Shown: one piece after another, positions 1 to 42,707 of the stretch
Layout: each line of letters opens with the position of its first letter
Numbering within the stretch: position 1 is the first letter of the stretch
NCBI GenBank assembly: GCA_977020255.1
Contig: CDROCS010000562.1
Span: 310,001-374,000 of the forward strand
DNA from: Obrimoposthia wandeli
Taxonomy: Eukaryota
Direction: 5' to 3'
Length of the DNA stretch: 64,000 nt
Program-made: the position numbers and the translations under genes
The notes under the pieces: generated by a model
What the model was told of the DNA's origin: nothing
Seen by the model: only the letters and a program-made list of their open reading frames with translations
The model's database searches: none

Positions 1-235
1 TAAGTTTTTGAGAAATCGGGTAGATTTGTTCCTCGAAGTTAAGAATTTGATAAGTTTTGAAAAATCGAGTAGATTTGTTCCTCGAAGTTAAGAATTTGAT
101 AAGTTTTTGAGAAATCGGGTAGATTTGTTCCTCGAAGTTAAGAGTTTGATAAGTTTTGAGAAATCGGGAAGATTTGTTCCTCGAAGTAAGAATTCGATAA
201 GTTTTGAGAAGTCGAGTGGATTTGTTCCTCGAGTT
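1..235 (+). repeat. Tandem array of ~49-50 bp units (>=4.7 copies, truncated by window edge) in the element's 5' leader
   Basis: Unit taagttt(t)gagaaatcgggtagatttgttcctcgaagttaagaatttga repeats at about 1, 51, 100, 150, 198. Confidence 0.95.
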
Positions 236-237
236 AG

Positions 238-459
238 TAAATTTGATAAAGTGAGAATCGAGTGGATTGATACTCGAAGTAATTAATTGAATAGGTTAAG
301 TCGGGAGACTGTGTCCTCGAACTAATTAAAGAAATAAAAAATCGTAAATAAATTTGATAAAGTGAGAATCGAGTGGATTGATACTCGAAGTAATTAATTG
401 AATAGGTTAAGTCGGGAGACTGTGTCCTCGAACTAATTAAAGAGATAAAAAATCGTAAA
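238..459 (+). repeat. 111-bp tandem duplication in the 5' leader
   Basis: taaatttgataaagtgagaatcgagtgg...aaaaatcgtaaa occurs at 238 and 349, nearly identical. Confidence 0.95.
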
Positions 460-728
460 ATAAGAATTGTGAAATAAGATACAATAATAAGTAAATTGAT
501 ATCGTAAACGAATACATAATTGATAAGACAACGGATAATAGAAAAGGACCCGCGTATAATACTAGAAGACAAAGTCAGATTCCCAAGGAAGAGATAAATA
601 ATAATAAAGTTAACCGAATTGAACAGGTTCCCCAAACAGATAACGAAGTAACAGAAAAGACTAGAGTCGAAGAAAACGTATCAGAAAGAGACGTTGATCA
701 ATCAGCGGTTTCAACCGGCAGTTTTAAT

Positions 729-3269
729 TTGACTGAATTATTTGGTGACATAGACCCAGAAGAATATGAAATTGCCAATCCAGTAGTGATTGAGGAAGTT
801 CCATTGAATAATATTGAAGAAATAGTTGAAGATATAGTTGAAAATATGGCTCAACCAGGAGCTCAAGCAGAAAATAATGCAGGAAATAATGTAGGTGACA
901 TGAATGCCGAGCAGTTGGCACAAGCCATAAATGCGACGTTGAGACCCAATTTTTCAGGATCATTGCAGATTACAAAGTTTAAAGGAGATGAGGAAAGTAT
1001 TTGTGACTTCCTCGCAGAATATTCGAGTTGTGCAGATGTTCAAGGATGGAACGATAAAGAAAAATGTGTCCGAGTACAGGCACACTTAACCGGATTAGCA
1101 CTTGAAGTGTATAAACATTTGACAGAAGCAGAACGTTTAGACTGGCCAACGTTGGAAAATGCTTTTATTGGAAAATTGGTATTAGGAGACTTAGCCAAAG
1201 TAAATAAGCGACTCATGAGAGAACGGAAACAGAAACATGATGAAGGCGTGAATGAATACGCGTATGTTTTGAGAACCTTGGCCGCAAGAGCGTACCCAAG
1301 AAGAATAATGAGAAATCAGGACGGTAATCCTGTAGCTCAAGAAGCACAAGTAGCGGAAAATGACCGGAACCAAAATGAAATGGCAGAGGTTTTGTTAGAT
1401 ATATTTAGAGGAGGATTGAAAAAGGATATTAAAGTGTTATTAGCAGTATCGGATACAAATGATTTTGATAACGCCGTGCGAAAGGCGAGAGAGATCGAGA
1501 AAAATATAAAAAATAACGCAGCATTGGCAATTTACGCAATGACTGCAGGTGACGACGATAAGACAAAGGTATTTGTGAATAAAACAGAACCGAGTAATTT
1601 TCAGAATCGAAATTATGGACAAAATAAGTTTGAAAAAGTAGATGAATCCAGTAACGGAAATAGCGATAATTTCCGAAGTAGGAATCGAGATGATTCGAGA
1701 GGTAGAAATAATAGTGAGTCTTGGAACAGGAATCGAGATGATTCAAGAGGTAGAAATGGTAATGATTCGTGGAATAGAAATAGAGATGATTCCAGGAATA
1801 GATTTAATAGAGATAATTCAGGAAATCGCCAACCTTGGAGAGGAGACGATAGGAATTATAACGCCAACAGAGGAGAGCGAAGTGACTCTCGATTTGGAAA
1901 TAATACAGGAAGTAGTGACGGAAGATTCAATAATCGAGGAAGCGGTTTTGAATCGAATTTCCGAAGAAATGATTTTAGAGGACGATATGATAATAGACAG
2001 AATAGTCGTCGAGTGCAGTTCGAAGATGAACAAAATAAGATAGATATTCGAGGGAGAATAATGTGTTACACGTGTAAACAAATGGGTCACTATTCGAGAG
2101 ATTGTACGAGAAGTAAAGAGTTCGGAACTAACAGATTTGGAAATAATAATTTCGGTAATAATAATTTTGGAAACAATTATAGAGGATATAATTCACCTCC
2201 GCCATGGAATAGAGGTGGGGGATATACTCCACAGCCATGGAGACCGAATAATCAGTATACAGATAGACAACAGTCACCAGGTAGATACAATAACTATGCA
2301 GACAGACAGCAAGGAGCTGAGAGATACAATAATTACGTAGGACAGCAAGGAGCTGAGAGATATAATAATTCCGGTAAATATAATAATAATAATGTCGACA
2401 AGACAAATAGTCGTGAGAGTTCGCCGAAACCGAAGGGAAATTTTAGTTATGTAAGCGATGACAGCGATAGGAATCGTGAGACCGAACTTCGACGCGAAAT
2501 AGATTTTGAGGATAGTGATAGTAAATTTGAACGAATGTTGGGAATAATTAAAGATTCACCACATACAAAGATGGCGAATTCATCTACGTTGTCGAAACAA
2601 GCAAAAAGTCTACACTCGAGAGAAGAGATGAATGATTTAATGAATAAAATACTAGAAGCGTATGAGACACCAATAGAGAAAACGTGTAACGCACAACCTA
2701 TGACTGATCATGTAGAAGCAGCAAGAAATGCTATGAGTATGGAAAATGAAAAAAAGATAATTAGTGAAGCTAAGGAGACGTTGAATCAACCGTTAGATGA
2801 AACAAGTGAAGCTCCAGAAGTTTTGGCCAAATTGCAAACAATTAAAGTGCACAGATTGGAAGAAGTGCGAGCAGAATTGGTTAAACATAGTCATGATAAC
2901 TTGGGTTACAAAGAAGTACCACGAGGACTATTGAAAGGTTATGGTCGTTACGTACAGAGATCAAACCAAAAAGGAACGATGAAAATTTCGCTTCGATTAA
3001 TTTCCGGACAGATAATACATGAAAAACTTAACGTGTATCAGACAATGAAAACTATTCGGAAAAAGTTGGCAGAGAAACTTGAAATTGATGGAATGAATAT
3101 GTTGTTCCATTATAAAGGGAGATCACTAGATGATGAGGACGTACCAGTCAAGTGTGGATATCCGATAGGAAATGAATTAGAGGAAAAAATTGATGTCATC
3201 ACGGTAGGACGTCAAGAGTTAGTAGATAATGAAGGATTAACGGAGATATTAAATTCTGCGTTGGAATAG
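729..3269 (+). CDS. gag: ORF1: Gag (capsid-like domain, R/N/D-rich and N/Q/Y/G-rich low-complexity regions, CCHC zinc knuckle) with a C-terminal ubiquitin/SUMO-like domain
   Basis: FKGDEESICDFL..W..KEK..V..HLTG.AL..Y retrotransposon Gag pattern; knuckle CYTCKQMGHYSRDC; UBL-like MKISLRLISGQ...FHYKGRSLDDEDVP at 2979-3212. Frame is open from 495; 729 is a TTG and the first ATG is 846. Confidence 0.9.
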   Translation: MTELFGDIDPEEYEIANPVVIEEVPLNNIEEIVEDIVENMAQPGAQAENNAGNNVGDMNAEQLAQAINATLRPNFSGSLQITKFKGDEESICDFLAEYSSCADVQGWNDKEKCVRVQAHLTGLALEVYKHLTEAERLDWPTLENAFIGKLVLGDLAKVNKRLMRERKQKHDEGVNEYAYVLRTLAARAYPRRIMRNQDGNPVAQEAQVAENDRNQNEMAEVLLDIFRGGLKKDIKVLLAVSDTNDFDNAVRKAREIEKNIKNNAALAIYAMTAGDDDKTKVFVNKTEPSNFQNRNYGQNKFEKVDESSNGNSDNFRSRNRDDSRGRNNSESWNRNRDDSRGRNGNDSWNRNRDDSRNRFNRDNSGNRQPWRGDDRNYNANRGERSDSRFGNNTGSSDGRFNNRGSGFESNFRRNDFRGRYDNRQNSRRVQFEDEQNKIDIRGRIMCYTCKQMGHYSRDCTRSKEFGTNRFGNNNFGNNNFGNNYRGYNSPPPWNRGGGYTPQPWRPNNQYTDRQQSPGRYNNYADRQQGAERYNNYVGQQGAERYNNSGKYNNNNVDKTNSRESSPKPKGNFSYVSDDSDRNRETELRREIDFEDSDSKFERMLGIIKDSPHTKMANSSTLSKQAKSLHSREEMNDLMNKILEAYETPIEKTCNAQPMTDHVEAARNAMSMENEKKIISEAKETLNQPLDETSEAPEVLAKLQTIKVHRLEEVRAELVKHSHDNLGYKEVPRGLLKGYGRYVQRSNQKGTMKISLRLISGQIIHEKLNVYQTMKTIRKKLAEKLEIDGMNMLFHYKGRSLDDEDVPVKCGYPIGNELEEKIDVITVGRQELVDNEGLTEILNSALE

Positions 3270-3383
3270 ATAAAAACGCCTATAGAAATTTTAGACAGTT
3301 CAAGCGAAAGCGGAGATAATGATGTAGCTGAAGCTTGGAACAAGACATCCACACCAGAACCGTACGTAGCTGAATTACAAGAC

Positions 3384-6300
3384 ATGAATTTAGAAAATGA
3401 GTTGACAACTCCAGTGGTCGAGGTGCCACCAGAACCAGATATAATTCAAATCAGACAAGATGAAGTCACGGATACAGCTAATCAAGCGAGACAAAACGAA
3501 AACGTAACCCAACTAGTAGGAGAAGACGAAATCTCCGAAATTGTAGATTTAGATTCACCAATTTGGCATGCTGCATACAAAGATAGACAAGCAGAGCAGA
3601 TGATGCGACAAAATGAAGAGATTGGCCATGAAGAAGGACCAAGTCAAGAGATACAGTATAATGATGAACCGTATGATCCAGGAGAGAATCAAACTGAGTA
3701 TCAGTATTTTCGAAGAGGACCTGGAAGACCTAGAAAGGACGGAAGTATATTACGAAATGTTCTAACTGCACCACAAACTGATGAAGAGAGACATCTAAGC
3801 ATTGGACAGTTAGCAGCGTCATTAGAGCAGTATAGTGCAGAGAGGAATGAAGATATCAGAGGTGATATGAATTCAGAAGCTCCAAGTAGTAAAGATATAC
3901 TTACGGGAATTCTCAGGCAAGTGAAGCCGAAGTTGTTCAAAATGTACAGAGATGAAACAACCGATATAACAGACAATTTGACTAAAGCAGTTAGATCACA
4001 GATGTCTGCAGTAAAGAGAATGACCGCGAATCATGTATACCATGCATCGATAGATAGATTTTACGACGGTGAAGTTTTAGCGCGATTATGTGGAAACCAG
4101 ACTACAAATAAAAAGTTAATTACAGCAATCACATATCTATGTTTCCAATTGACGGAACGAACGAGCCAACCTCACGAAGTCAAACAAGGAATAAATGAAG
4201 CAATGTATCTGATCGAGAATGTATTACAGAGACGAATTGACGAAAACGGAGGTTGGGCAAAATTAAGTGACTACGCTAAAACCATTGTGGAAATGAATGA
4301 AGACGATGACGAACAATGTCATGAGAATCGTCAAAGAGAAAATAAACAATACCGTCCGAAAGAGAGAAACAATCAACCAAATATGTCCACAACAATGATG
4401 ATGATGATGTTAGTAATGTTCATGGGAATGCAACAGGCATCAGGACTGATAGCATACGACTGTAGCATACCAAAGATGGGACAAAAGTATTCACTGCTTG
4501 ACAGCGAAGACTGTCCAGAATCACAACCGTCAAAACTAGAAGTTAAAGGTGTTGAAAACTACTTTGTGTATCAGGATGTTGATAAAGTACAAGTAGAAGT
4601 GAAAGAATGTTCAATCCATTCAAGTTATCACGAATTCTATTGTGGCCATAGAAGTTTTATGTCGGAAATCACACCTACCACACCGTACAAAGCACATAAG
4701 GTTTTGCCAAGAGATTGCGAAGACGCATTTCGAACAGGAACAATAGAAGTAGACAAGAATTACAAACCTGATGTAAAAATTGGAGTGAGACGATACGAAA
4801 CAGTCACGAGAGTCGGACAACGATGGGCTGATGGATCTTGTGACGGAGGAACAAAAAACGTGCGTGGAACCAAAGTAACCGAGTTAGTAATGGACGTAAC
4901 TTACAAAATCGAATTAAAAACATGGACCGCCAATTTTGATAAAAAGACACAACTAATGATGAAGTATCCAGAATGTAAAATGACAGATACATCTTGTTTT
5001 ACAGGCGAATCCACAATTGTGTATCACGTGAATCCGAAACAATGCTCTTTAGTATTTTTGAAAGAGATTAGCTTTAACAAAATAAAAGGATTCCTGTATA
5101 ATAAAGATGGAGAAGGATTCCTGTATAATAAAGTTGGAAAAGGATTGCTCAATGAAACAAGACCAATTCCAATGACAAAGACACCTACACTGTTAATGGC
5201 AACATCAATAGAAGAAGGATTGATATTTATTAAAAAGAGAAACAAAGCGCGATGTGGAATGACTGTTAGTACTACAAACTATCCTGGAATAGTTTTGTCC
5301 AAAGAAGCAATAGCATTGGCAGAAACCAAGCTAGAACCTAGAGATATGCAGCTACACACGTATTTTAATAATAAAATTGATTTCTATTATCATAAAGGAT
5401 TGATGCAAATGGAACAGTTATATCGGATGATGATCGAAAGAGATTGCCAGCTAAACAAAGAGATCGTAAGAACAAAGTTAGCATTAGCTATTACGAATCC
5501 AGACATGGTAGCACCATTATTACCCTTGGATGAAGGAGTATTTGCTAAAACCATGGGAGAAGTATTGTATACTTACAAGTGTAATAAAGTAGAGGTACAG
5601 TTGAGAAAAACAGATCGATGTACGAGTGAATTGGCAGTAACGTATAATTTAAAAGATCTTTTTGTTGAACCAATCACGAGAATGATACTTCCAAAAGACA
5701 CTCCAACTAAAGAAATCAGCTGCTCTAATATAATGGCACCTGAATATCAGATGACGAATGATCTATGGATAACGTTACCTGATCGAAAGCCAACGAAAAC
5801 CCCAGCGATGATAAAAATGACGAATCTTAAAGGTAAAATGAAATTCGAAGCGGTGGAAAATATGGAGAACGCAGGATTGTACAATGAAAAAGATTTAAAA
5901 GCGGCGTGGAACGAAATAATGTTTCCAGTAAAAAGAGCCAGAGTACTTACGGAGATGGTACATCGAGCATTACCGCCAGGAGCTAGATATGCGAATTTTG
6001 ATATGTTATTATCGCCAAGTCATTTCAAGGAAGCAGCACATCAGACACTTAGAAAGATGTGGGGGAAATTCCTTGTTTTAGGACAACTATTTTCGGGTAT
6101 CATAGGTATTTATGTTATAATTAAATTTGTGCTGGTAATTATAGCCCAGGTGTTGTCTACGTATAGTTTATACAGGATAACCGGAATCACCTGGCAACTT
6201 ATAATTGGATGTTTTCCATTTTTAGCAAAATATCTAATGCACCATCATCACGAGAACGAGTTGCGAGCCCTCAAGAAGGAGCAACATCAAACGAGAACCA

Positions 6301-6986
6301 TGATACGAGACCCAAGAAATTATCGAGACGACAACGACGACGATAACGATAGTCCAGGAGTATATGCAAAGATACCAGGAAAACCAAAGATTCCGTTACC
6401 AGACAAGGAAGAAGTGGCGTTAAACCTATACCCAATGAAGGAACTAAAGGAAGAGAAGGAAAAGTTCAAGAGAGGCATTTTAATGATAAGATGGCCTAAA
6501 GTGAGCTACAGTGAGATTCCACAAGCAGAGGAAAAAGACAAAAAAGATAATTCCAGAAGAATTCTGAAGTCTAGGATATCAAATGAGAATCCAAATGCTC
6601 CACCCCAAGTAGCAGTAACATTGAACGGAAGAGAATATCTTGCCGAAGTTGATACTGGATCCGCAGTATCAGTACTGAGTAAAGAAATCTTGTCATCAAA
6701 AGAATTAAGAGAAGTATGTCCTAGAAAACAGACATTTGTTAACGTAAATGGTACAGATGTAGTGTCGGAAGGAACACTGAAATGTTCATTGAATATCGAT
6801 GGAAGAGCATTGCAGTTAAGTGCTAGAATATTCACAGATTGCGGTAGTCCAGTCATGATTGGGATGGACGTAATAAGAATGTTTGAAGGAATAATTATAC
6901 TACCAAACAACAAGAGTTATAAGAATGACAGTTCAGTGAGAGAGATAAAAATGTTGAGAGGACCTATAGTCGAAAAGAAAAAATAA
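3384..6986 (+). CDS. env: ORF2: acidic N-terminus + AT-hook + Bcl-2-like domain + internal signal peptide + chuvirus-type (class III-like) envelope glycoprotein + TM + retropepsin 1
   Basis: RRGPGRPRK (3711-3737); IDENGGW BH2-like motif (~4236-4256); signal MSTTMMMMMLVMFMGMQQASG then LIAYDC (4446); Cys-spaced ectodomain motifs DGSCDG, RCGMTVSTTNYP, RDCQL, GEVLYTYKC; TM ~6070-6236; protease VDTGSAVS (DTG 6651-6659). Confidence 0.85.
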   Translation: MNLENELTTPVVEVPPEPDIIQIRQDEVTDTANQARQNENVTQLVGEDEISEIVDLDSPIWHAAYKDRQAEQMMRQNEEIGHEEGPSQEIQYNDEPYDPGENQTEYQYFRRGPGRPRKDGSILRNVLTAPQTDEERHLSIGQLAASLEQYSAERNEDIRGDMNSEAPSSKDILTGILRQVKPKLFKMYRDETTDITDNLTKAVRSQMSAVKRMTANHVYHASIDRFYDGEVLARLCGNQTTNKKLITAITYLCFQLTERTSQPHEVKQGINEAMYLIENVLQRRIDENGGWAKLSDYAKTIVEMNEDDDEQCHENRQRENKQYRPKERNNQPNMSTTMMMMMLVMFMGMQQASGLIAYDCSIPKMGQKYSLLDSEDCPESQPSKLEVKGVENYFVYQDVDKVQVEVKECSIHSSYHEFYCGHRSFMSEITPTTPYKAHKVLPRDCEDAFRTGTIEVDKNYKPDVKIGVRRYETVTRVGQRWADGSCDGGTKNVRGTKVTELVMDVTYKIELKTWTANFDKKTQLMMKYPECKMTDTSCFTGESTIVYHVNPKQCSLVFLKEISFNKIKGFLYNKDGEGFLYNKVGKGLLNETRPIPMTKTPTLLMATSIEEGLIFIKKRNKARCGMTVSTTNYPGIVLSKEAIALAETKLEPRDMQLHTYFNNKIDFYYHKGLMQMEQLYRMMIERDCQLNKEIVRTKLALAITNPDMVAPLLPLDEGVFAKTMGEVLYTYKCNKVEVQLRKTDRCTSELAVTYNLKDLFVEPITRMILPKDTPTKEISCSNIMAPEYQMTNDLWITLPDRKPTKTPAMIKMTNLKGKMKFEAVENMENAGLYNEKDLKAAWNEIMFPVKRARVLTEMVHRALPPGARYANFDMLLSPSHFKEAAHQTLRKMWGKFLVLGQLFSGIIGIYVIIKFVLVIIAQVLSTYSLYRITGITWQLIIGCFPFLAKYLMHHHHENELRALKKEQHQTRTMIRDPRNYRDDNDDDNDSPGVYAKIPGKPKIPLPDKEEVALNLYPMKELKEEKEKFKRGILMIRWPKVSYSEIPQAEEKDKKDNSRRILKSRISNENPNAPPQVAVTLNGREYLAEVDTGSAVSVLSKEILSSKELREVCPRKQTFVNVNGTDVVSEGTLKCSLNIDGRALQLSARIFTDCGSPVMIGMDVIRMFEGIIILPNNKSYKNDSSVREIKMLRGPIVEKKK

Positions 6987-6998
6987 ACTACGTTCCGT

Positions 6999-11666: not shown

Positions 11667-11714
11667 AGATCACAGAAATCGAAGCCGAATACCAATACCA
11701 TTAAACTTACACGA

Positions 11715-14700: not shown

Positions 14701-16928
14701 AGGAAATACAAAAAGATGCTGATACAAAAGGACCGACGTATATATTCGACGGCGATGTCATCAAAACACGTGAGTATGGAAGTAAGAGAGTGATAATAGA
14801 AACGATGGAAGGACATAAAACATGCTTGTCCGCTAAAAATGGATTCGGAAAGTTGATGATACAAGGTAAACAGGTACAGTTGATTATCGGAAGAAATGGA
14901 ATCGAGGAGATGTCAAAACAACGACAGACAACAAAACGATCCAATCAGAAACAGATATCTCTCAAACGATTGATAATTAAAACCCTTTGCAAAAGGTCAG
15001 TCAAGGCCCTGTGCACCGTTGCACAAGGATTGATCTACGGAGTAGTAATTGGATTAGTACTACAAGCCATGCCAACCAGTAAAGCTGAAATGATGACATT
15101 ATACGAGTATAATCTACATTTGAGAAATCTAGACAACACCCTCGAAATAATCAAGACGTCCCACAGTAAAGCCGTAAGGATCATGTGTGTAAAAGGATGT
15201 CCAGGACGAATGTGTATAGTTCCAGCGACCGAAATGAAAACACTTAATGGACATTATGGAGTTAGTATTGTCACATGTGAAGACTACACATTTGGACAAA
15301 CTAAAATAGTACTTCTCAGTGACATGTCCAACCAAAGTGCACACAAATTTAAAATATTAACCATCAAGAGTAAAGGAATACCAGCAGTACGTTATGGTAT
15401 TCTAGAATTGGTTAATCCAATACTCGCACTGATCATTGGATTCATAATATTAATATTACTCATCTTGTTTTGTTGTACAAAGATAGAGTTGAGATCAAAA
15501 AAGAAACGTCATGATCTCGCAAGACGAACAGGTCAAATGAATTTACAAAAATTCAACACAAGTATACCAAGACCACCATTTCTAGATGAACCAGCACCGG
15601 AGTACCAGCCAACGATATATGAACATATCGAGGAAAGACCGTACTATATGAGTAATCTGAGTTGTTTCATTGAAATTCCTGAGTTTAGGAATCGAACGAT
15701 CATAGGAATCATGCTGATCATACAAATTACCACTACCAAGGCTAGTTATGAAATCATGATCAGTAAATGGAGACAAGATGTAATACGGGCGTTATACATA
15801 GAAATCCCTCTATTAAAAACAAATCACGTAGTAGACATTCATCTACAGACGTCAGCAACCGACAATATCGATCAGAAATTGTATGTCATCCGACAGGTCA
15901 GAATAAAGATCGACAAAAGTACACCCGATTACAACTTAATATTATTCTATCATGAAAGAGTGTTATACCTACGGATAACGATATCAAAAAGGAAGCGGAT
16001 TATCCAAAGTATCCGAACAAAGTCATTAATATTGCCTAGAGATGAGCGCATCTGGAAAATTGTCGACAGGATTATGATCACAGGTAGACGACGTAAAGCC
16101 GTATGGAATTCCGTTAGAATATTTTTCAGATTACTAGAAACTGACAAAGTAACAGTATCGTGTCCCAATCCAGATGGCGGAATCAGATTCGAAATCCAAA
16201 ACCAAATGTTAGTACCACATTTTGATACAGAATGTCTGTGTAATCGAATTCCCAGTAACACTACAGAGACCTCAACCATAATCATGGTAATAACAGGTGA
16301 AATATTCTACATAACTCTAAGATACCAGAACCGTCGATTTCGTAGATCCGGTATAAGTATCAAACCCAGGAAAATCATTCCCAAAAAACCAATCCTAGTC
16401 AAAAAGAAGGCAAAGATAAACGAAAGTAAACCCCATTCCAAAAAGCCGAACGTGATCAGAACAAAGACAGAAGCGAAAGAAAAAGAGCTAAATTCCAGAA
16501 ACCAAAGTACAGTTATTAAGAGGACAAGAGTGAGGGGAACGATCCCACTAGATCCCAAACATCATTTCCAATCCAAAATAATAATACCTGTTCTACCAGA
16601 AACAAAACACCCAAATCCACGAATTTTTAGAAAATCGGACATAATACATGGAAACCGATCAAAACCCATGGAAATGTCATTCGAACCGACAAACAACAAA
16701 ATGAAGTATGATTATCAATCATCAGATAGCGGAGTAACAGCGGTCAATGCTCTAATTGGAATGGCCGTAGTGTCAACAGCAGTGGTTCTATTGACAATCG
16801 TGTGCGTGAAAGGCAGTCAAGTATGCCCAAGAATACGACGAAAATGCGAAGGATTGCGATGCTGTGACAAACCCACCATGGAGGAAGTGGAATTGCGACC
16901 CTTACCTCCGCCTCCCATCAAGATATGA
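11715..16928 (+). CDS. ORF4: accessory polyprotein with 3x IPT/TIG-like repeats, dual-specificity phosphatase, inactive phosphatase copy, and several signal-peptide/TM modules
   Basis: Three ~80-aa repeats with a Y(Y/F)DG core; DUSP IIPDKLYLGN...VLVHCQKGISRSAT (HC at 13506); second DUSP-like domain with VLIYQKKGTMLAP; six hydrophobic segments; ends TGA TAA. Confidence 0.85.
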   Translation: MVSDRNYINMMTSGSEEKPARIGMLRMKHQEEKEVIRHIAPQEILEEDEEIIVVFEKTQPTDVAKEVIVKDALTNEFLCELRVSYYDGNTLVAALYQNSNVFTTEKVIIEITLTPNIVAWQNYDSTEAGLASQEEKEPAGGHILHGTPKRLKQEYHDVIMVLRNSHGKRDIMRVHLIDADTEKIICQMDTKYFDGKTIVCCIPESHRLDTDQTEVSVRLSVIEGFHSPNQPEVANNKIIKATAELRIDSGYRKWEAKNKKPQRINMIREQVTNSIQPKYHAEIVSSAPSVITSINDEIIILLKNRWPSSTEIRVNLINYAKTPISKLNVIYFDGLSIMGKLETIVMCYGAQFQVEILKDSVIPYPIHKYEGEINPIILTPSLISVQTDIPEYPSSESSQDSEPESNDTESTESEDNMIERFGKTMEVEFAKESRKRQNIEFVKQNIQERRIKSAEETESEEDSTKEQTSETKMNISPAIRMLRGKKLAKLSNIDEQIEKRLERLKLEESELLPPMSEIIPDKLYLGNVEDATDEKKLLEQGITYVINVTMNHKSQYQTIRAMTLGLKDSMDANLLEWFVETNEILHRELRNQGKVLVHCQKGISRSATLVLAYLIKTRRMQVLEALKYLQERRSIANPNLNFLGHLANYQLLLQEQRRMDDIPEDPKEKNFLQALSLTGLFLAGVDKITQIMPKVFLCHPGDIDTAGLKFHSINRVINIVEVGNEIISLCQNTEDDTTRYIHASNREINDAQQHLTKLTQTIQAEVTEGNGVLIYQKKGTMLAPTIGVSLLVEYHGHTPEEAMVYIKQNRPDTEFKPLLVREIEKYAEKRKQQRETNEATTTVPSFQYQRLLAIGLLSCLMPITGAQEIGSNHGNSSWFNEIHNYTIQYHTQALMMLLVLLGLIDVWIIRKCLQSMRTDSKRFQFVKMKRPNGPTNKVLVYLDERIEDNIVNEAIFYPQNRILNQFRIDYEADRQRTLDRISTTFAGCKRRKRIVKEIQKDADTKGPTYIFDGDVIKTREYGSKRVIIETMEGHKTCLSAKNGFGKLMIQGKQVQLIIGRNGIEEMSKQRQTTKRSNQKQISLKRLIIKTLCKRSVKALCTVAQGLIYGVVIGLVLQAMPTSKAEMMTLYEYNLHLRNLDNTLEIIKTSHSKAVRIMCVKGCPGRMCIVPATEMKTLNGHYGVSIVTCEDYTFGQTKIVLLSDMSNQSAHKFKILTIKSKGIPAVRYGILELVNPILALIIGFIILILLILFCCTKIELRSKKKRHDLARRTGQMNLQKFNTSIPRPPFLDEPAPEYQPTIYEHIEERPYYMSNLSCFIEIPEFRNRTIIGIMLIIQITTTKASYEIMISKWRQDVIRALYIEIPLLKTNHVVDIHLQTSATDNIDQKLYVIRQVRIKIDKSTPDYNLILFYHERVLYLRITISKRKRIIQSIRTKSLILPRDERIWKIVDRIMITGRRRKAVWNSVRIFFRLLETDKVTVSCPNPDGGIRFEIQNQMLVPHFDTECLCNRIPSNTTETSTIIMVITGEIFYITLRYQNRRFRRSGISIKPRKIIPKKPILVKKKAKINESKPHSKKPNVIRTKTEAKEKELNSRNQSTVIKRTRVRGTIPLDPKHHFQSKIIIPVLPETKHPNPRIFRKSDIIHGNRSKPMEMSFEPTNNKMKYDYQSSDSGVTAVNALIGMAVVSTAVVLLTIVCVKGSQVCPRIRRKCEGLRCCDKPTMEEVELRPLPPPPIKI

Positions 16929-17050
16929 TAAGTCAGAGGAGGTTGTAGATAATTAATGTATGAAATATGTAGAAATACCTAGAAGCAATTGTACAAATAG
17001 TAGAAATATATAAAACTCATGTAGAAATTAATCATCATCATGTATTTAGA

Positions 17051-17350
17051 ATGTCCGAAGAATGCCCAATATGTTTGGAAGATCTAACCGAACGAAGAAC
17101 AAGACCCGAAACCTGCAACCATTTACACCACGAGGAATGTTTATCGACATGGATCAGAACTTATGGACAGTTCGGACATCCAACATACCCTTGTTGCCCT
17201 GTATGCAGAAGACAATTCGCAAGATTCATCATGTTAGAACCCAACCAAGAGGATGTATATGTACAGGTGGTATTCTGTTGGAAGAATTTCGGAGAGTGTT
17301 GGTGTTACTACTGTTTGTCAGAACGACAAAATCCGACCACTTTTGTGTAA
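17051..17350 (+). CDS. Small RING-H2 protein 1 (putative E3 ligase) with C-terminal Cys motif
   Basis: CPIC...CNHLHHEEC...CPVC gives C3H2C3; tail CWKNFGECWCYYC. Confidence 0.85.
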   Translation: MSEECPICLEDLTERRTRPETCNHLHHEECLSTWIRTYGQFGHPTYPCCPVCRRQFARFIMLEPNQEDVYVQVVFCWKNFGECWCYYCLSERQNPTTFV

Positions 17351-17410
17351 ACATCACACAATCACCAGTCCTCAATCGAGCCCAAATTCAACATCAACCC
17401 TCTCACAGTA

Positions 17411-17716
17411 ATGTCTGGAGAATGTTCCATCTGCTACGAGAGCATCGTGGACTTCTACACCAAGCCCAACAACTGCGACCACCTCTTCCACATCGAATGC
17501 CTCGAGACGTGGATTCCCATCGCCAACAGCAACAATCCCCTCGACTTCCCAACCTGCCCGATGTGCAGAGCGACCTTCTCAGTGCACTACGTGTACAACC
17601 AGGACAGCCTCCAAGCAGTGGTACCCATAGTACACTGCTGGAAAACTATCTGCGATTGCTGGTGCTCGTTCTGCGTGGAGGAGCGACGCACAGGCCAGCC
17701 CAATTCCCAGCAATAA
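17411..17716 (+). CDS. Small RING-H2 protein 2 (paralog of RING 1)
   Basis: CSIC...CDHLFHIEC...CPMC; tail CWKTICDCWCSFC; collinear with RING 1. Confidence 0.85.
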   Translation: MSGECSICYESIVDFYTKPNNCDHLFHIECLETWIPIANSNNPLDFPTCPMCRATFSVHYVYNQDSLQAVVPIVHCWKTICDCWCSFCVEERRTGQPNSQQ

Positions 17717-18067
17717 TCGAAGGTAACTTTCTGACTTTGAACGTGACATCATGAACTACCCTGTGTATTGCATACCGCGATAAATTAGCTACCATAATTG
17801 TAATCATAATTGTATAATCTTGTGAAACTGTAAAATGACCATTACCATTTTTATGTATGTTGTTTAACTGAAATTGTAATTATTATACTGAAATTCTAAA
17901 AGACAATTTTTATGCCTAGTGTGAATGTGTAAACATGCCTAAAATCAGAACAAAACTCGGTAGGATTAAAAAACTAAAGGTTCATTTTGAAACTAAAATT
18001 TTAACCTTATAAATTAACGACGAAAACAGTTGAACCCCAAGTTGAAAGGAATCATTTTCTTGTGCAG

Positions 18068-18598
18068 ATGAAGTGTTCAGTATGCAGGGAGAAAATTTGG
18101 ACGGGATCGGCATCCCCTGTCGGCTGCCGTCACAAATTCCACGAGTCGTGCCTCTATTTGTGGGCCAAGGCTCGACCCCCAGGCCAAATCACATGCCCAT
18201 TGTGCCGGGCACCCTTTTGCAAGTGGACGCTCCAGTGCCGTGGACGATCCAAGGGCACCCGATCACCTGCCAGTTGCATTGGTGGCATACACTGCCAGTG
18301 CTACGTGTGTCTCGCACGCCGTCGCGACACACAATTGGGCATCCGCGAGCGATGGCGGTCTAGCCGCGACTGCCATTCATGGTTCCAGGCCAGACGCTTA
18401 TGGATGGAGAACCATGCGCTGAACGGGCAATATTTTGACCTATTTGTCGAGAGCCCGCACCTGACCCGGAGCCAGCAACTACACCTCTACAACGGGGACA
18501 GTCCGTCCTTTCCAGACCTACCCCTGGAGCAGGTCATGCGTTACCTAACTAGTCGGAACCAGCCGACAATTACAATCGATCTTACTAACGACAATTGA
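18068..18598 (+). CDS. RING-H2 protein 3 (diverged paralog with longer C-terminus)
   Basis: ATG at 18068; CSVC...CRHKFHESC...CPLC; tail CIGGIHCQCYVC. Confidence 0.8.
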   Translation: MKCSVCREKIWTGSASPVGCRHKFHESCLYLWAKARPPGQITCPLCRAPFCKWTLQCRGRSKGTRSPASCIGGIHCQCYVCLARRRDTQLGIRERWRSSRDCHSWFQARRLWMENHALNGQYFDLFVESPHLTRSQQLHLYNGDSPSFPDLPLEQVMRYLTSRNQPTITIDLTNDN

Positions 18599-19324
18599 TA
18601 ACATTACATTCTTTCCTCCCTTCTTTCCTTCCTAATTCCTTACTTATCTATGTAGCCATTTTGTGTATAAGTAATAAATTAGTGAATATTTGAGACTCTG
18701 TCCAAATGTTCACTTTTTTAGAAAAAACCGAGTTTCTTTTAAAAGTTTTGGGCATGTTTGATGAATTGAATGACTGATTTTGTAGGGATGGACCTAAAAT
18801 CAACAGCCAGAGGCTTATAAGAGTAAAATCGATACGTTCCGGGGACGTAACTTTTTTGGAACCCCCGAGATATGTTAGATTTAGGAATTGAGAAATTATT
18901 AAAAAAATTAAATAATTTATACTAAAATAAAATCCTTGAAAGCAAGGTTGAAAATTAAATATTTAAAATTAAGTTAAAATATTAGAGGATAAAATCAGGG
19001 GTAAATATTAATAGGACCACGAAGGTCGTGTGTAGTGTGTCGTATATATAGGTTAAGATTATTAATACAAAAGTGCAAAATAAGAATAAGACTTAATTAG
19101 GGGAAACTAAGAAGAAAAATCAAGAAAGAAATTAATCAAGGAAAGAAGAAATTATCGTTTAATTTTCCACCTGCCAAATTGTTTCGGCGCAGCACTCGTT
19201 ATATCGACTATTGTGTTTTCAGCTGTCTAGGATCGACAGTAGCGCTCGAGCCTAAGAGGAAAAAAGTAATTAGATTAAATCTATAAATTTTACTTAATTG
19301 CTTAGCAGCTGATTTTATATCGAC

Positions 19325-19404
19325 TATATAAGTCGCCCCAATCAATTGTCAGAAAAAGAAAGGATTCTAGCCGAGACACACACAGCGGAAAAGAGCTGGT
19401 AAGC
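19325..19404 (+). promoter_or_regulatory. TATA-like box and downstream 5' splice donor in the putative LTR
   Basis: TATATAA at 19325-19331; CTG|GTAAGC with GT at 19399-19400. Confidence 0.45.
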
Positions 19405-19487
19405 GTGTCTAATTTGAGTTAGATTAATTCCGGCATTTTTATAGAAATCTGAAATTTACCAATCCTGAAATATTTACCCATCCTGCC

Positions 19488-19883
19488 ATCAATTTGAATC
19501 CAGTATTATCAATTTGAATCCAGTATTATCAATTTGAATCCAGTATTATCAATTTGAATCCAGTATTATCAATTTGAATCCAGTATTATCAATTTGAATC
19601 CAGTATTATCAATTTGAATCCAGTATTATCAATTTGAATCCAGTATTATCAATTTGAATCCAGTATTATCAATTTGAATCCAGTATTATCAATTTGAATC
19701 CAGTATTATCAATTTGAATCCAGTATTATCAATTTGAATCCAGTATTATCAATTTGAATCCAGTATTATCAATTTGATCCAGTATTCTCAATTTGAATCC
19801 AGTATTATCAATTTGAATCCAGTATACTCAACTGCATCCAGTATACTCAACTGCATCCAGTACGCTCAGCTGAATCCAGTTTG
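19488..19883 (+). repeat. 20-bp tandem array (~20 units) inside the LTR
   Basis: atcaatttgaatccagtatt x14 perfect (19488-19767), then progressively diverged units. Confidence 0.98.
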
Positions 19884-19957
19884 CTCTACCGATCCCGCGC
19901 CAGCCGATCTCGAGACTAGAAAACGTAAGAGAGATTAGTAGGGCCAAGAGTTGAGGG

Positions 19958-20483
19958 TTACCCATTTTCTGATTTACATTAATTTTGGAAAAATTGAAAG
20001 TTACCCATTTTTGATTTACATTAATTTTGGAAGAATTGAAAGTTACCCATTTTTTGATTTACATTAATTTTGGATAAAATTGAATTACCCATTTTCCGAG
20101 TTACATTAATTCCGGATAACATTGAATTAACCATTTTCTGATTTACATTAATTTTGGATAAAATTGAATTACCCATTTTCCGAGTTACATTAATTCCGGA
20201 TAACATTGAATTAACCATTTTCTGATTTACATTAATTTTGGATAAAATTGAATTACCCATTTTCCGAGTTACATTAATTTCGGATAACATTGAATTAACC
20301 ATTTTCTGATTTACATTAATTTTGGATAACATTGAATTACCCATTTTCTGAGTTACATTAATTTCGGATAACATTGAATTAACCATTTTCTGATTTACAT
20401 TAATTTTGGATAACATTGAATTACCCATTTTCTGATTTACATTAATTTTGGATAAAATTGAATTGCCCATTTTTTGATTTACA
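19958..20483 (+). repeat. 42-bp tandem array (~12.5 units) with partial 84-bp higher-order structure
   Basis: Variants ttaaccattttctgatttacattaattttggataaaattgaa and ttacccattttccgagttacattaattccggataacattgaa alternate. Confidence 0.97.
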
Positions 20484-20745
20484 ATAATTATTGATATAAA
20501 GATAAAAGTTTACCCTCCAAGTAGTAAAGTTGACATTAAAGTTAAATTGATTGAAAAAGCTATAACTTGAGCTTATTCGCGAGTTAGAGGAACGACTCTA
20601 AAAAACTCGACTAACTTTACATAAAATCGATACGTGGTTCATCCCCACTTTTTGTAGAGACTTACAGAAGTCTTAGGAATTTTTACTATACTTTTTAGAA
20701 AATACGTACATAAACGTATTGTTGTGTTCAGTTTAGTGTGCTACC

Positions 20746-20751
20746 AATAAA
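20746..20751 (+). terminator. Polyadenylation signal in the putative LTR
   Basis: AATAAA ~150 bp before the inferred LTR end. Confidence 0.4.
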
Positions 20752-20904
20752 CGATTTCCTACATTAGAACACGTTGTTTTTAAACCCTTCAGATTAAGAG
20801 ACGTCAAACCAAACACCTTCAGATAAGAAAAAGAGATAACACTAAACCATAACACTAAGTAGGCCACGACCAACTTTAAGACCTGCTTCTATTCGAACTC
20901 ACGT

Positions 20905-20916
20905 TGGGGCTCTCCG
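20905..20916 (+). promoter_or_regulatory. Degenerate primer-binding site (tRNA-Pro-like)
   Basis: TGGGGCTCTCCG resembles TGGGGGCTCGTCCG, the complement of the tRNA-Pro 3' end; it directly follows the inferred LTR end. Confidence 0.5.
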
Positions 20917-21049
20917 CACATAAGAGGATCTATACAAGTCTCGTATAGAAACCCCAACAAAATAATTAAGAGAGAATAAGATATATAAAAACAGAATTGA
21001 ATTAAGAATACGATAAGTAATAAGTGAATTAATACGGGAATAAGTAAAT

Positions 21050-21454
21050 TGATATAAAGAGTTCGTAAAATAATAAATTGAGTAATCAAAATATAAAATA
21101 TTAAAAAGTAATAAGTAAATTGAAGTTGTTGAGATATAAGTGAATACATAATTGACAAGATAGTGGATAATCATTGAGAACCCGCATTTAATACTAGAAG
21201 ACAGAGTCGAGATGATCAGATTCCTCGAGTAAATAAAGATGTTACATAAGTATTTCAAGTCGAAGATGTTGAAGAAACAGTATCTGAAAGATACATTAAT
21301 TATTTGACGAAGTAAATCAAGTAGATATCCAGGAAAGATTGAAGAAGCTAATTTGAACGATATTGAAGACATAATTGAGGAAAATGTGGCTAACGCAGCT
21401 ATGAATGTGGAATAGTTAGTGCAAGCATTGAATGTGATGTTGAGATCCAATTTT
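21050..21454 (+). pseudogene. Decayed copy of the leader and gag 5' end from a related element
   Basis: Homologous to ~455-955: PAFNTRRQS vs PAYNTRRQS; MNVE*LVQALNVMLRSNF vs MNAEQLAQAINATLRPNF; contains stops and indels. Confidence 0.85.
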
Positions 21455-34319: not shown

Positions 34320-34483
34320 CAGTAATTATTCACCTATAAGGGGTCCCACCTATAAGGGTGTCCGGTCACCGAAAATTTCACGCTTCACCTATAAGGGTAC
34401 CCGGTGACATCTATAAGTGATTCGGTGTCGGTCTCTCTCAAAAACATGTTTTAATGAATACCCTTACAGGTGAATAATTACTG
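34320..34483. mobile_element. pogo/Tc1-type MITE, copy 1
   Basis: TA TSD; 22-bp TIR CAGTAATTATTCACCT(A/G)TAAGG with 21/22 match; internal cacctataag repeats. Confidence 0.9.
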
Positions 34484-34622
34484 TACCAGGAGACCAAAAC
34501 AATAATAGATGTCAGGATATTTTGTAGTATTTGAAGATAACGAACAAATAGTTGGTTTAGTGTCTAAATAATTTTAAAGATGAGAATGTTCTTTGCACAG
34601 CTATAGTAACGACATACACCTC

Positions 34623-42575: not shown

Positions 42576-42707
42576 TACCCTAACTTGGATATCTGAAAAT
42601 TATGATGAACATTGACCCAGACGGTCCTGATGGCCTTTGCTGCGAGTCACAATTCCCGCTCATCTGCGAGAGACTATGCAGATGACCAGATCCGATCTTC
42701 GCTTAAC

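What the first reader, a model, noticed from the sequence alone, without database searches (positions are those of the whole stretch)
495..20903. Giant enveloped Ty3/Gypsy element carrying a virus-style anti-apoptosis and signalling-suppression kit
Seen in sequence: one retroelement encodes, beside Gag/PR/RT/RH/IN, a fusion glycoprotein, a Bcl-2-like domain, an IAP (BIR-BIR-RING), a dual-specificity phosphatase pair, IPT/TIG-like repeats, a ubiquitin/SUMO-like domain and three RING-H2 proteins, with long ORFs intact. Established: vBcl-2, IAPs, VH1-type phosphatases and RING ligases are host-defence antagonists of large DNA viruses (herpes-, baculo-, poxviruses), not normal LTR-element cargo. 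Inference: this may be an infectious, retrovirus-like element that blocks both mitochondrial and caspase-level cell death plus stress/immune signalling. From memory, the giant planarian Burro Gypsy elements were reported with an IAP-type domain; I cannot verify overlap, so novelty must be tested against them.
Basis: partly seen in the sequence, partly recalled or inferred. Interest (0 to 1): 0.95.

Follow-up and report, generated by a model that had tools for sequence, protein, structure and literature searches.

The report
Giant enveloped Burro-like Gypsy retroelement
This is a real, nearly intact giant enveloped Ty3/Gypsy retroelement of the kind already described in planarians as Burro; its cell-death and ubiquitin genes are typical of that kind, while its MAP-kinase-phosphatase-like pair, membrane modules and three small RING genes appear not to have been reported.

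Summary
The observation largely holds. One + strand reading frame (495-16928, about 5,400 codons) has three internal in-frame stops and no frameshift. The other two frames have 435 and 525 stops.

**Modules found, in order:**
- Gag with a CCHC knuckle, then a ubiquitin-like domain and a Bcl-2-like fold
- a Monjiviricetes-type fusion glycoprotein (Pfam E 2e-95) with its own signal peptide and membrane anchor
- protease 1, an IAP-like module (BIR, degenerate BIR, IAP-type RING), then protease 2, RT, RNase H and integrase
- three beta-rich repeats
- one intact MKP-like phosphatase plus one catalytically dead copy
- three signal/anchor membrane modules
- three paralogous RING-H2 ORFs downstream

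IPT/TIG repeats could not be confirmed.

**Novelty.** Giant planarian Burro/GYPSM1 elements were already reported with Ubl, BCL2, an in-frame env, PR and BIR, and were proposed to be proviruses that meddle with apoptosis and ubiquitination (PMC6431247). The closest database relatives (pol 45-57% identical) share the layout but not the IAP module or the cargo after integrase. I rate this a new variant of a known kind.

**Open points.** Function and infectivity are inferred only. The host, other copies and the LTR pair could not be examined.

The parts
1..454 (+). Tandem-repeat arrays in the 5' leader (49-nt units at 1-235, 111-nt units at 233-454). The window's left edge cuts the element, so no 5' LTR is in view.
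   Evidence: Relatives L002 and L003 also have tandem arrays upstream of gag.
495..16928 (+). One continuous reading frame of about 5,400 codons (polyprotein). It has three internal in-frame stops and no frameshift. No recognised domain is interrupted.
   Evidence: 3 stops in frame against 435 and 525 in the other two frames.
927..1511 (+). Gag capsid-like region
   Evidence: 27-33% identity to the gag of relatives L005 and L006 and 21-22% over longer stretches to L002-L004. No Pfam Retrotrans_gag hit.
2064..2108 (+). Gag CCHC zinc knuckle (single)
   Evidence: PF00098 E 8e-6; pattern found.
2949..3146 (+). Ubiquitin-like domain with no terminal di-glycine
   Evidence: Pfam ubiquitin E 0.011 and UBX E 0.054. 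PDB hits are nearly all ubiquitin, ISG15 or SUMO, best 3e-6. Relative P0017 has a weak ubiquitin hit at the same position.
3969..4340 (+). Bcl-2-like helical domain
   Evidence: Homologous stretches in P0005 and P0017 hit Pfam Bcl-2 (E 1e-3, 0.055). Profile A1 hits only the Bcl-2 family in the PDB. AF2 model pLDDT is 65-87 over the domain. All top 50 Foldseek PDB hits are Bcl-2 family (E from 6.5e-3, TM by target 0.45-0.61).
4383..4448 (+). Internal signal-peptide-like hydrophobic stretch at the start of env. Inferred also to anchor the preceding Bcl-2-like protein.
   Evidence: hydropathy and sequence. The same feature is seen in relatives in alignment A1.
4392..6335 (+). Envelope: Monjiviricetes-type fusion glycoprotein, in frame between gag and pol. 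Membrane anchor at 6084-6170.
   Evidence: PF24664 E 2e-95. Anchor. 1,277 library hits; the best are 34-38% identical retroelement polyproteins, and free proteins of about 650 aa are about 25% identical.
6609..6878 (+). Retropepsin domain 1 (D-T-G present)
   Evidence: PF13975 and PF13650.
7182..7358 (+). BIR domain 1 with complete zinc ligands
   Evidence: PF00653 E 3e-13 for the module; pattern; PDB cIAP1, NAIP and DIAP1 BIRs.
7554..7649 (+). Degenerate second BIR-like zinc motif
   Evidence: PF00653 E 0.027; atypical Cys/His spacing.
8004..8135 (+). IAP-type RING (C3HC4_3)
   Evidence: PF13920 E 3e-12; cIAP1, cIAP2 and XIAP RINGs in the PDB. 28% identical to a separate 3' RING ORF of relative L006.
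8241..8534 (+). Retropepsin domain 2 (D-T-G present)
   Evidence: PF13975 and PF00077.
9189..11087 (+). Reverse transcriptase (9189-9665, Y-x-D-D present), Ty3-type RNase H (9852-10241), integrase zinc and core domains (10569-11087)
   Evidence: PF00078 1.5e-37, PF17917 8e-39, PF17921 3e-18, PF00665 1e-11. 45-57% identity to the closest pols.
11892..12824 (+).
   Evidence: Repeats seen in the sequence. All-beta secondary structure but pLDDT 38.8. No Pfam or PDB hit.
13263..13664 (+). Dual-specificity phosphatase domain with an intact catalytic loop; MAP-kinase-phosphatase-like
   Evidence: PF00782 E 1e-40; DUSP10 E 2e-22, also DUSP4, DUSP1 and DUSP16; catalytic motif.
13776..14159 (+). Second DSP-like domain lacking the catalytic Cys and Arg (pseudophosphatase)
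   Evidence: Second DSPc stretch. Pairwise alignment to domain 1: 21% identity, with catalytic positions replaced.
14262..16925 (+). Three consecutive modules, each with a signal-like hydrophobic stretch, a presumed luminal part, a strong membrane anchor and a basic tail
   Evidence: Hydropathy and sequence. No significant Pfam or PDB hit.
17051..17350 (+). RING-H2 ORF a (99 aa)
   Evidence: (PF13639 E 3e-9).
17411..17716 (+). RING-H2 ORF b (101 aa), GC-rich
   Evidence: PF13639 E 1e-8; GC 0.55, GC3 0.78.
18062..18598 (+). RING-H2 ORF c (178 aa), GC-rich
   Evidence: PF13639 E 2e-7; GC 0.57, GC3 0.65.
19100..19153 (+). Purine-rich tract, a candidate polypurine tract
   Evidence: Read directly from the sequence. 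Inference only.
19180..20901 (+). Candidate 3' LTR: TG...CA ends with an imperfect terminal inverted repeat, a TATA-like motif, AATAAA near the end, and two tandem arrays (19408-19847, 19959-20588). Unverified because no partner LTR is in the window.
   Evidence: No LTR pair was found.
20905..21450 (+). Primer-binding-site-like TGG... motif (20905-20919), followed by a degenerate leader and gag-start fragment of a related element
   Evidence: 472-580 against 21096-21213 is 73-79% identical. No protein similarity further downstream.

Best explanation
The region is the internal part and probable 3' LTR of a young, giant (at least 20 kb), envelope-bearing Ty3/Gypsy retroelement of the Burro-like kind.

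**Shown by sequence**
- One frame of about 5,400 codons encodes Gag-CCHC, a ubiquitin-like domain, a Bcl-2-like domain, a signal peptide, a class III-type (Monjiviricetes-like) fusion glycoprotein with a membrane anchor, protease 1, an IAP-like BIR/RING module, protease 2, RT, RNase H, integrase, beta-rich repeats, an MKP-like phosphatase, a dead phosphatase and three membrane modules.
- Three paralogous RING-H2 genes follow.

**Inferred**
- The long RNA is translated into polyproteins. The three in-frame stops act either as ordinary ORF ends or as leaky stops that set the ratio of products.
- The two retropepsins cut the modules apart.
- The internal signal peptide sends the glycoprotein ectodomain into the ER. 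It leaves Gag, Ubl and the Bcl-2-like part on the cytosolic side, with the signal's hydrophobic core acting as a tail anchor for the Bcl-2-like protein. The stop-transfer anchor returns protease and pol to the cytosol.
- The glycoprotein lets particles leave and enter cells.
- The cargo, captured from host genes long enough ago to have taken on the element's A-rich composition, keeps the expressing cell alive and quiet. The Bcl-2-like part acts at the mitochondrial step and the BIR/RING part at the caspase or ubiquitin step. The MKP-like phosphatase acts on JNK/p38-type stress kinases. The RING-H2 ligases act on unknown host targets.
For: **Architecture and domains.**

**Coding integrity.** 3 stops against 435 and 525 in the other frames.

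**Cargo is integral, not adjacent.** It is in the same frame. A fraction is 0.36-0.42 and GC3 0.26-0.39 throughout gag, env, pol, IAP, DSP and the membrane modules. The host ORF has A 0.28 and the flanks have GC of about 0.30. The IAP module sits between two protease domains.

**Family.** The closest relatives are long polyproteins with env-PR-(PR)-RT-RH-IN in one or two ORFs. Several have CCHC, ubiquitin, Bcl-2 and env in the same order, ankyrin repeats after integrase, and tandem arrays in the leader and 3' region.

**Literature.** Burro/GYPSM1 shows Gag, Ubi2/SUMO, BCL2, in-frame env, PR, RT, RH and IN plus BIR. It was proposed as a provirus that tinkers with apoptosis and ubiquitination (PMC6431247). 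BURRO1 is described as abundant, active and PIWI-controlled in planarians (PMC8532177). GAG-ENV-POL Ty3/gypsy elements with class III env occur in Platyhelminthes (PMC13524379).
Against: - No second copy, no LTR pair and no target-site duplication could be examined, so age and copy number are unknown.
- The three in-frame stops may be decay rather than design.
- The Bcl-2-like and ubiquitin-like calls rest on moderate evidence (model pLDDT 58 overall; E-values near threshold).
- None of the cargo activities is tested.
- The second BIR and the second phosphatase are degenerate.
- MATH/TRAF, dUTPase and ankyrin, which are reported for Burro, are absent here.
- No Burro sequence was available for direct comparison, and the host species is unidentified.
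- The closest database pols are only 45-57% identical.
Confidence: 0.72

Rival explanations
1. A dead, decaying endogenous copy. The three stops are inactivating mutations of a once single giant ORF, and the cargo domains are passengers picked up by template switching with no present function for the element.
For: There are three in-frame stops. Some relatives read through the corresponding junctions without a stop (L001, L006, P0017). The second BIR and second phosphatase are degenerate. The review notes decaying Burro fragments in another planarian.
Against: Only 3 stops in 5,399 codons and no frameshift. All catalytic motifs checked are intact: both D-T-G, Y-x-D-D, the phosphatase Cys-X5-Arg, and the RING and BIR zinc sets. 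None of the stops falls inside a recognised domain. Relatives also split the frame into ORFs at module junctions. The cargo has the element's composition, so it has been carried for a long time.
Confidence: 0.2
2. An assembly chimera, or a chance juxtaposition of a Gypsy element with host IAP, DUSP and RING genes.
For: None of the available relatives carries the IAP module in pol or anything like the cargo after integrase. RING-H2 ORFs b and c have a foreign, GC-rich composition.
Against: The IAP and phosphatase modules lie in the same frame as gag, env and pol. They have no intervening stops inside them, no introns, and the element's A-rich composition. The IAP module is bracketed by two protease domains. 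Variable cargo after integrase is a trait of the family: ankyrin, RNase_T and RING in relatives.
Confidence: 0.04
3. An endogenous viral element from a negative-strand RNA virus (glycoprotein gene) that happens to sit inside or beside a retrotransposon, rather than an env belonging to the retroelement.
For: The Pfam family is named for Monjiviricetes fusion glycoproteins. Hundreds of free proteins of about 650 aa match at about 25% identity.
Against: The glycoprotein is in frame between the Bcl-2-like domain and the protease. The best matches (34-41% identity) are all retroelement polyproteins with the same order. No other RNA-virus gene is present.
Confidence: 0.03

Closest known systems
Burro / GYPSM1 giant Gypsy-like LTR retrotransposons of planarians (Schmidtea mediterranea; Burro-like element of Dugesia/Girardia tigrina), as described in PMC6431247
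   Same: Giant size and one enormous reading frame (4,873-5,140 aa there, about 5,400 codons here). Gag with CCHC, then a ubiquitin/SUMO-like domain, then BCL2-like, then env in frame, then PR-RT-RH-IN. A BIR domain, RING-type motifs and tandem-repeat arrays. Env resembling mononegavirus fusion glycoproteins.
   Different: No MATH_TRAF_C, dUTPase, ankyrin or Smc/midasin-like hits here. One CCHC knuckle, not two or three. The frame carries three in-frame stops. An MKP-like phosphatase plus pseudophosphatase, three membrane modules and three separate RING-H2 ORFs are not in the published domain lists I could read. Sequence identity to Burro could not be measured, and Grohme et al. 2018 was not readable here.
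Uncharacterised giant env-in-frame polyprotein elements in ENA assemblies ERZ25039515 and ERZ5540424 (loci L001-L006; proteins P0001, P0003, P0017, P0159, P0186, P0275)
   Same: Pol is 45-57% identical, env-PR 31-41% and gag 21-33%. The order is the same, including CCHC, ubiquitin, Bcl-2 and env in P0017. Multiple protease domains. A long extension after integrase. Small 3' accessory ORFs, including an IAP-type RING. Tandem arrays.
   Different: They carry ankyrin repeats, an RNase_T exonuclease, C2H2 fingers and up to six protease-like domains. They have no BIR, no phosphatase, none of the beta repeats or membrane modules, and no RING-H2 trio.
GAG-ENV-POL Ty3/gypsy 'errantiviruses' with HSV-gB-type (class III) env in Platyhelminthes, Nematoda and Bryozoa (PMC13524379)
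   Same: A Ty3/gypsy pol with a class III-type env placed between gag and pol.
   Different: That study does not mention Burro, planarians or accessory anti-apoptotic cargo in the text searched. Whether its flatworm elements are relatives of this one was not testable, because no supplementary files were held.
Cell-death and signalling antagonists of large DNA viruses (baculovirus IAP, herpesvirus and iridovirus vBcl-2, poxvirus VH1-type phosphatase)
   Same: The same protein folds, put to presumed use by a mobile genome. The Bcl-2-like model matches KSHV, iridovirus and ASFV Bcl-2 homologues as well as it matches cellular ones.
   Different: This is analogy, not membership. The carrier here is a retroelement. 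The modules are parts of a polyprotein. The phosphatase's best sequence matches are cellular MAP-kinase phosphatases and the IAP's best match is cellular cIAP1.

Membership tests
Ty3/Gypsy (Metaviridae-type) LTR retroelement | Pol domain order PR-RT-RNase H-IN with Ty3-type RT-linked RNase H and H2C2 plus DDE integrase | tested here: met
   PF00078, PF17917/PF17919, PF17921 and PF00665 in that order. Thousands of Ty3/gypsy pols matched.
Ty3/Gypsy (Metaviridae-type) LTR retroelement | Gag with a capsid region and a CCHC knuckle | tested here: met
   PF00098; gag homology to relatives.
Ty3/Gypsy (Metaviridae-type) LTR retroelement | A pair of long terminal repeats with PBS, PPT and a target-site duplication | tested here: inconclusive
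   No LTR pair in the window, because the left edge cuts the element. A candidate 3' LTR (19180-20901) is preceded by a purine-rich tract and followed by a PBS-like motif that seems to belong to a neighbouring remnant.
Burro-like giant planarian Gypsy elements | Giant internal region read as one enormous frame | tested here: met
   Frame 495-16928, about 5,400 codons with 3 internal stops. The internal region is at least 18.6 kb.
Burro-like giant planarian Gypsy elements | Env in frame between gag and pol, resembling mononegavirus fusion glycoproteins | tested here: met
   PF24664 E 2e-95, in the same frame as gag and pol.
Burro-like giant planarian Gypsy elements | Ubiquitin/SUMO-like and BCL2-like domains just upstream of env | tested here: met
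   Ubl. Bcl-2-like. Moderate strength.
Burro-like giant planarian Gypsy elements | BIR domain | tested here: met
   PF00653.
Burro-like giant planarian Gypsy elements | MATH_TRAF_C, dUTPase between PR and RT, and ankyrin repeats (reported for Burro1 and the Dugesia element; not all present in every member) | tested here: not met
   No such Pfam hit at E up to 1 in the relevant stretches.
Burro-like giant planarian Gypsy elements | Sequence relatedness to Burro1-4/GYPSM1, and a dugesiid planarian host | not testable with these tools
   No Burro sequence or Repbase copy is held. The host was not identifiable: no exact protein in the collection and no RNA genes.
IAP (BIR-containing, RING E3) proteins | At least one BIR with the Cys-Cys-His-Cys zinc set, plus a C-terminal C3HC4 RING of the IAP type | tested here: met
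   The second BIR is degenerate.
IAP (BIR-containing, RING E3) proteins | Binding of caspases or IBM peptides; E3 activity | not testable with these tools
   Needs protein-level data.
Bcl-2 family | Bcl-2 helical-bundle fold | tested here: met
   All top 50 Foldseek PDB hits are Bcl-2 family, probability about 1.0, E from 6.5e-3, TM by target 0.45-0.61. The model is only moderately confident.
Bcl-2 family | Sequence-level membership (Pfam PF00452 above its cut-off; BH1 and BH2 motifs) | tested here: inconclusive
   No Pfam hit on the window copy. Relatives are below the cut-off. A conserved G-G-W is present at the place where the profile aligns to the Bcl-xL C-terminal region, and no BH1 pattern was found.
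MAP-kinase-phosphatase-type dual-specificity phosphatases | DSPc fold with the catalytic His-Cys-X5-Arg-Ser/Thr loop | tested here: met
   Domain 1 meets it. Domain 2 lacks Cys and Arg.
MAP-kinase-phosphatase-type dual-specificity phosphatases | N-terminal rhodanese-like kinase-binding domain | tested here: not met
   No Rhodanese or other Pfam hit upstream of the DSP domain.
Class III viral fusion glycoproteins (Monjiviricetes G type) | Near full-length match to PF24664, with an N-terminal signal peptide and a C-terminal membrane anchor | tested here: met
IPT/TIG repeat proteins | Immunoglobulin-like IPT/TIG fold | tested here: inconclusive
   No Pfam hit. The model is all-beta but pLDDT is 38.8, so no fold search was run on it.

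The most novel reading that the evidence does not exclude
This may be a currently or recently active retrovirus-like agent of an invertebrate, probably a flatworm, and the first retroelement known to encode a MAP-kinase-phosphatase-type enzyme with a pseudophosphatase partner. It would also carry a cassette of three small type-I membrane proteins and three RING-H2 ligases, on top of the Bcl-2-like and IAP-like modules known from Burro. That would be a retroelement whose host-manipulation toolkit rivals that of a large DNA virus, and whose cargo is swapped between lineages (ankyrin, RNase_T and RING in relatives).
Probability: 0.3. Interest if true: 0.75.

Novelty: new variant of a known kind. 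Interest (0 to 1): 0.55.

Why it matters
Retroelements are usually seen as minimal genomes. Burro-like elements break that rule, and this copy widens the known cargo from apoptosis and ubiquitin modules to a stress-kinase phosphatase and membrane proteins. It also shows, by comparison with relatives, that the region after integrase is a swappable cargo bay. If the cargo is expressed, these elements would be a natural example of host-gene capture for host control by a retroelement. They would also be a link between LTR retrotransposons, retroviruses and negative-strand RNA virus glycoproteins. The lineage has no close relative among about 15 billion database proteins, so it also marks an unsampled host or element clade.

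Tried and rejected
- **LTR pair and age.** Self-comparison of the window found no LTR pair, only a 110-nt leader-like match at 73-79% identity. LTR dating was therefore dropped.
- **Other copies in the window.** tblastn of all element proteins against the rest of the window found nothing.
- **Exact-sequence look-up of the ORFs.** None is in the collection.
- **Relatives of the cargo after integrase.**
  - The word-index search found nothing, though its length filter would exclude giant polyproteins.
  - IMG/VR and JGI metagenome scans found nothing.
  - phmmer and tblastn against all fetched relatives found nothing.
- **Relatives of the IAP module at the head of pol.** The only hit was a cellular mussel IAP.
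- **A second metagenome scan with pol.** It returned only distant pols at 28-34% identity.
- **IPT/TIG.** Pfam, PDB sequence search and a single-sequence AF2 model were all uninformative. I did not run a fold search on the poor model.
- **Membrane modules.** Only sub-threshold Pfam hits (poxvirus 2L_N, reovirus p10, neurexophilin; E 0.02-0.03), which I treat as noise.
- **The 230-aa ORF at 17062-17754.** Rejected as an alternative-frame artefact overlapping RING-H2 ORFs a and b.
- **Host identification.** No tRNA or Rfam hit in the window.
- **Grohme et al. 2018.** Not held, so the original Burro domain tables could not be checked for a phosphatase.
- **Non-coding similarity to relatives.** None.

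Full report
**1. What is there**

Between 495 and 16928 the + strand holds a single reading frame of about 5,400 codons. It has three internal in-frame stops and no frameshift. The other two frames of the same stretch have 435 and 525 stops. The stretch is GC 0.36-0.40 with a strong excess of A over T. The flanks are about 0.30 GC with no such skew.

Pfam and PDB sequence searches of the pieces between stops give the following, in order.

- A CCHC knuckle at 2064-2108.
- A ubiquitin-like domain at 2949-3146 (Pfam E 0.011; PDB hits nearly all ubiquitin, ISG15 or SUMO).
- A Monjiviricetes-type fusion glycoprotein at 4392-6335 (PF24664, E 2e-95, almost full profile length). It has a signal-peptide-like start (4383-4448) and a membrane anchor (6084-6170).
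- Retropepsin 1 at 6609-6878.
- BIR at 7182-7358, a degenerate BIR-like motif at 7554-7649, and an IAP-type RING at 8004-8135.
- Retropepsin 2 at 8241-8534.
- RT, RNase H and integrase at 9189-11087.
- A DSPc phosphatase at 13263-13664, and a second DSPc-like domain at 13776-14159.

Three small RING-H2 ORFs follow at 17051-17350, 17411-17716 and 18062-18598.

**2. The less obvious modules**

*Bcl-2-like domain.*
- Pfam does not call it on the window copy.
- The stretch just upstream of env is homologous to the same stretch in three relatives.
- Two of these give weak Pfam Bcl-2 hits. In P0017 the order is CCHC, ubiquitin, Bcl-2, env.
- A profile of the four sequences hits nothing in the PDB except Bcl-xL, Bcl-2 and Bak (E 0.05-2).
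- An AF2 model has pLDDT 65-87 over the domain and 58 overall.
- Its top 50 Foldseek PDB hits are all Bcl-2 family proteins, best E 6.5e-3. Its top hits in the viral library are mostly viral Bcl-2 homologues, four of the first five.
- I accept a Bcl-2-like fold with moderate confidence.

*Phosphatases.*
- The first domain has the intact catalytic loop. Its best matches are cellular MAP-kinase phosphatases (DUSP10 E 2e-22, then DUSP4, DUSP1, DUSP16).
- The second aligns to the first at 21% identity and has lost the catalytic Cys and Arg.
- This is an enzyme plus a pseudoenzyme, not a pair of enzymes.

*Beta-rich repeats.* Upstream of the phosphatases lie three beta-rich repeats of about 100 residues (11892-12824). 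The IPT/TIG label could not be tested. No Pfam or PDB hit was found, and the model was too poor.

*Membrane modules.* Downstream (14262-16925) lie three modules, each with a signal-like stretch, a strong membrane anchor and a basic tail. None has a recognisable relative.

**3. Cargo is part of the element**

- The IAP-like module sits between two protease domains.
- All modules up to 16928 share one frame and one composition: A 0.36-0.42 and GC3 0.26-0.39. The neighbouring host ORF has A 0.28.
- This argues against a misassembly or chance neighbours. It suggests the cargo has been carried long enough to take on the element's base bias.
- The exception is RING-H2 ORFs b and c, with GC 0.55-0.57 and GC3 0.65-0.78. 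I cannot explain this.
- The three RING-H2 proteins are paralogues, 26-39% identical, and share an extra Cys-rich tail.

**4. Relatives**

- A full HMMER scan of 1.84 billion representatives with the glycoprotein-bearing segment found 1,277 hits.
- The best, at only 34-38% identity, are long polyproteins with env-PR-(PR)-RT-RH-IN. Free proteins of about 650 residues match at about 25%.
- The closest pols are 45-57% identical. Nearly all come from one ENA assembly, ERZ25039515, whose host is unknown.
- These relatives are also giant. One polyprotein has 4,844 residues. They have two to six protease-like domains, ankyrin repeats after integrase, and tandem-repeat arrays in the leader and 3' region.
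- They carry small 3' accessory ORFs, including an RNase_T exonuclease and an IAP-type RING.
- They share gag, env-PR and pol with the window element. They share nothing of the BIR module, the region after integrase, or the RING-H2 ORFs.
- Searches for that cargo elsewhere also failed.
- So the backbone is conserved, and the cargo bay after integrase, as well as the space between the proteases, differs from lineage to lineage.

**5. Ends of the element**

- The window starts inside tandem arrays of the 5' leader, so the 5' LTR is not in view. No LTR pair exists in the window.
- After the last RING-H2 ORF there is a purine-rich tract (19100-19153).
- A stretch of about 1.7 kb follows (19180-20901) with TG...CA ends, a TATA-like motif, two tandem arrays and an AATAAA near its end. 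I list it as a candidate 3' LTR.
- It is followed at once by a PBS-like motif and a degenerate leader and gag-start fragment, 73-79% similar to the element's own leader. This looks like the remnant of a neighbouring related element.
The start coordinate, 495, is only where the frame opens.

**6. Comparison with what is known**

- The review of giant transposons (PMC6431247) describes planarian Burro/GYPSM1 elements with one ORF of 4,873-5,140 residues.
- That ORF holds Gag with CCHC knuckles, MATH_TRAF_C, Ubi2/SUMO-like, BCL2-like, an in-frame env with hits to mononegavirus fusion glycoproteins, PR, dUTPase, RT, RH and IN, plus BIR, ankyrin and RING-type motifs.
- The review already proposes that they are integrated proviruses meddling with apoptosis and ubiquitination.
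- BURRO1 is described as abundant, active and PIWI-controlled (PMC8532177).
- GAG-ENV-POL Ty3/gypsy elements with class III env are reported in flatworms (PMC13524379).
- The window element matches this kind in its defining layout.
- It differs in lacking MATH, dUTPase and ankyrin.
- It also differs in carrying the phosphatase plus pseudophosphatase, the membrane modules and the RING-H2 trio. I found none of these in the literature I could read.
- The original Burro paper was not available, so a phosphatase in Burro-2 to -4 cannot be excluded.

**7. How it most likely works**

Shown: the domains and their order. Everything below is inferred.

- Translation yields polyproteins whose amounts are set by the three stops, either as ORF ends or as leaky stops.
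- The retropepsins release the modules.
- The internal signal peptide places the glycoprotein ectodomain in the ER lumen. It leaves the Bcl-2-like protein membrane-tethered on the cytosolic side, and the anchor returns protease and pol to the cytosol.
- The glycoprotein mediates cell exit and entry.
- The Bcl-2-like, IAP-like and MKP-like modules restrain apoptosis and JNK/p38-type stress signalling in the expressing cell.
- The RING-H2 ligases and membrane modules have unknown targets.

**8. Verdict**

I rate it a new variant of a known kind, of moderate interest mainly for the unreported cargo and for the lineage's distance from anything in the databases.

**9. Slips to disclose**

While reasoning about I also recalled short BH2-type motif strings of cellular Bcl-2 proteins. 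These were used only as pattern checks. The conclusions rest on the profile, PDB and fold searches.
- My first two notebook entries record the ORF finder's bounds for the four frame segments. One search printed the gap ranges used to count stops. These bound the stops more closely than this report does.
- translated the frame in a script only to count stops. Nothing read through was printed, saved or searched.

Noticed in passing
window 17411-17716 and 18062-18598: Two of the three RING-H2 ORFs are strikingly GC-rich (GC 0.55-0.57, GC3 0.65-0.78). The element is otherwise GC 0.36-0.41 and the host flanks about 0.30. This could mean recent capture from a GC-rich source or a different expression route.
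   Followed up: partly
window 6609-6878 and 8241-8534; loci L002, L003, L006: Retropepsin domains are multiplied in this family: two here, both with D-T-G, and up to six in relatives, some after integrase. Tandem protease domains might pair within one chain.
   Followed up: partly
window 20905-21450: A PBS-like motif and a degenerate leader and gag-start fragment of a related element sit directly after the candidate 3' LTR. This suggests a tandem or recombined arrangement of two elements.
   Followed up: partly
window 23355-25001 (+): An intronless 548-aa ORF with a weak secretin/adhesion-type 7TM receptor hit (PF00002 E 3e-6). Probably a host gene.
   Followed up: partly
window 47904-48332 (+): A fragment of a DDE_1 (pogo/Tigger-type) transposase, E 7e-17.
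   Followed up: no
window 34623-35479; 37330-38051; 34314-34487 and 42391-42579: An exact 429-nt tandem duplication, a tandem array of units about 100 nt long, and a dispersed repeat of about 180 nt at 90% identity, all in the AT-rich flank.
   Followed up: no
L001 9547-11622; L006 21702-22841 and 22895-23398: Relatives carry an RNase_T-type exonuclease ORF and a separate IAP-type RING ORF downstream of pol. This shows that the 3' cargo bay differs between lineages.
   Followed up: partly
proteins P0006 and P0195: Two relatives of this eukaryotic retroelement are labelled in NCBI as proteins of bacterial MAGs (Flavobacteriaceae, Turicibacter). These are probably mis-binned eukaryotic contigs.
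   Followed up: no
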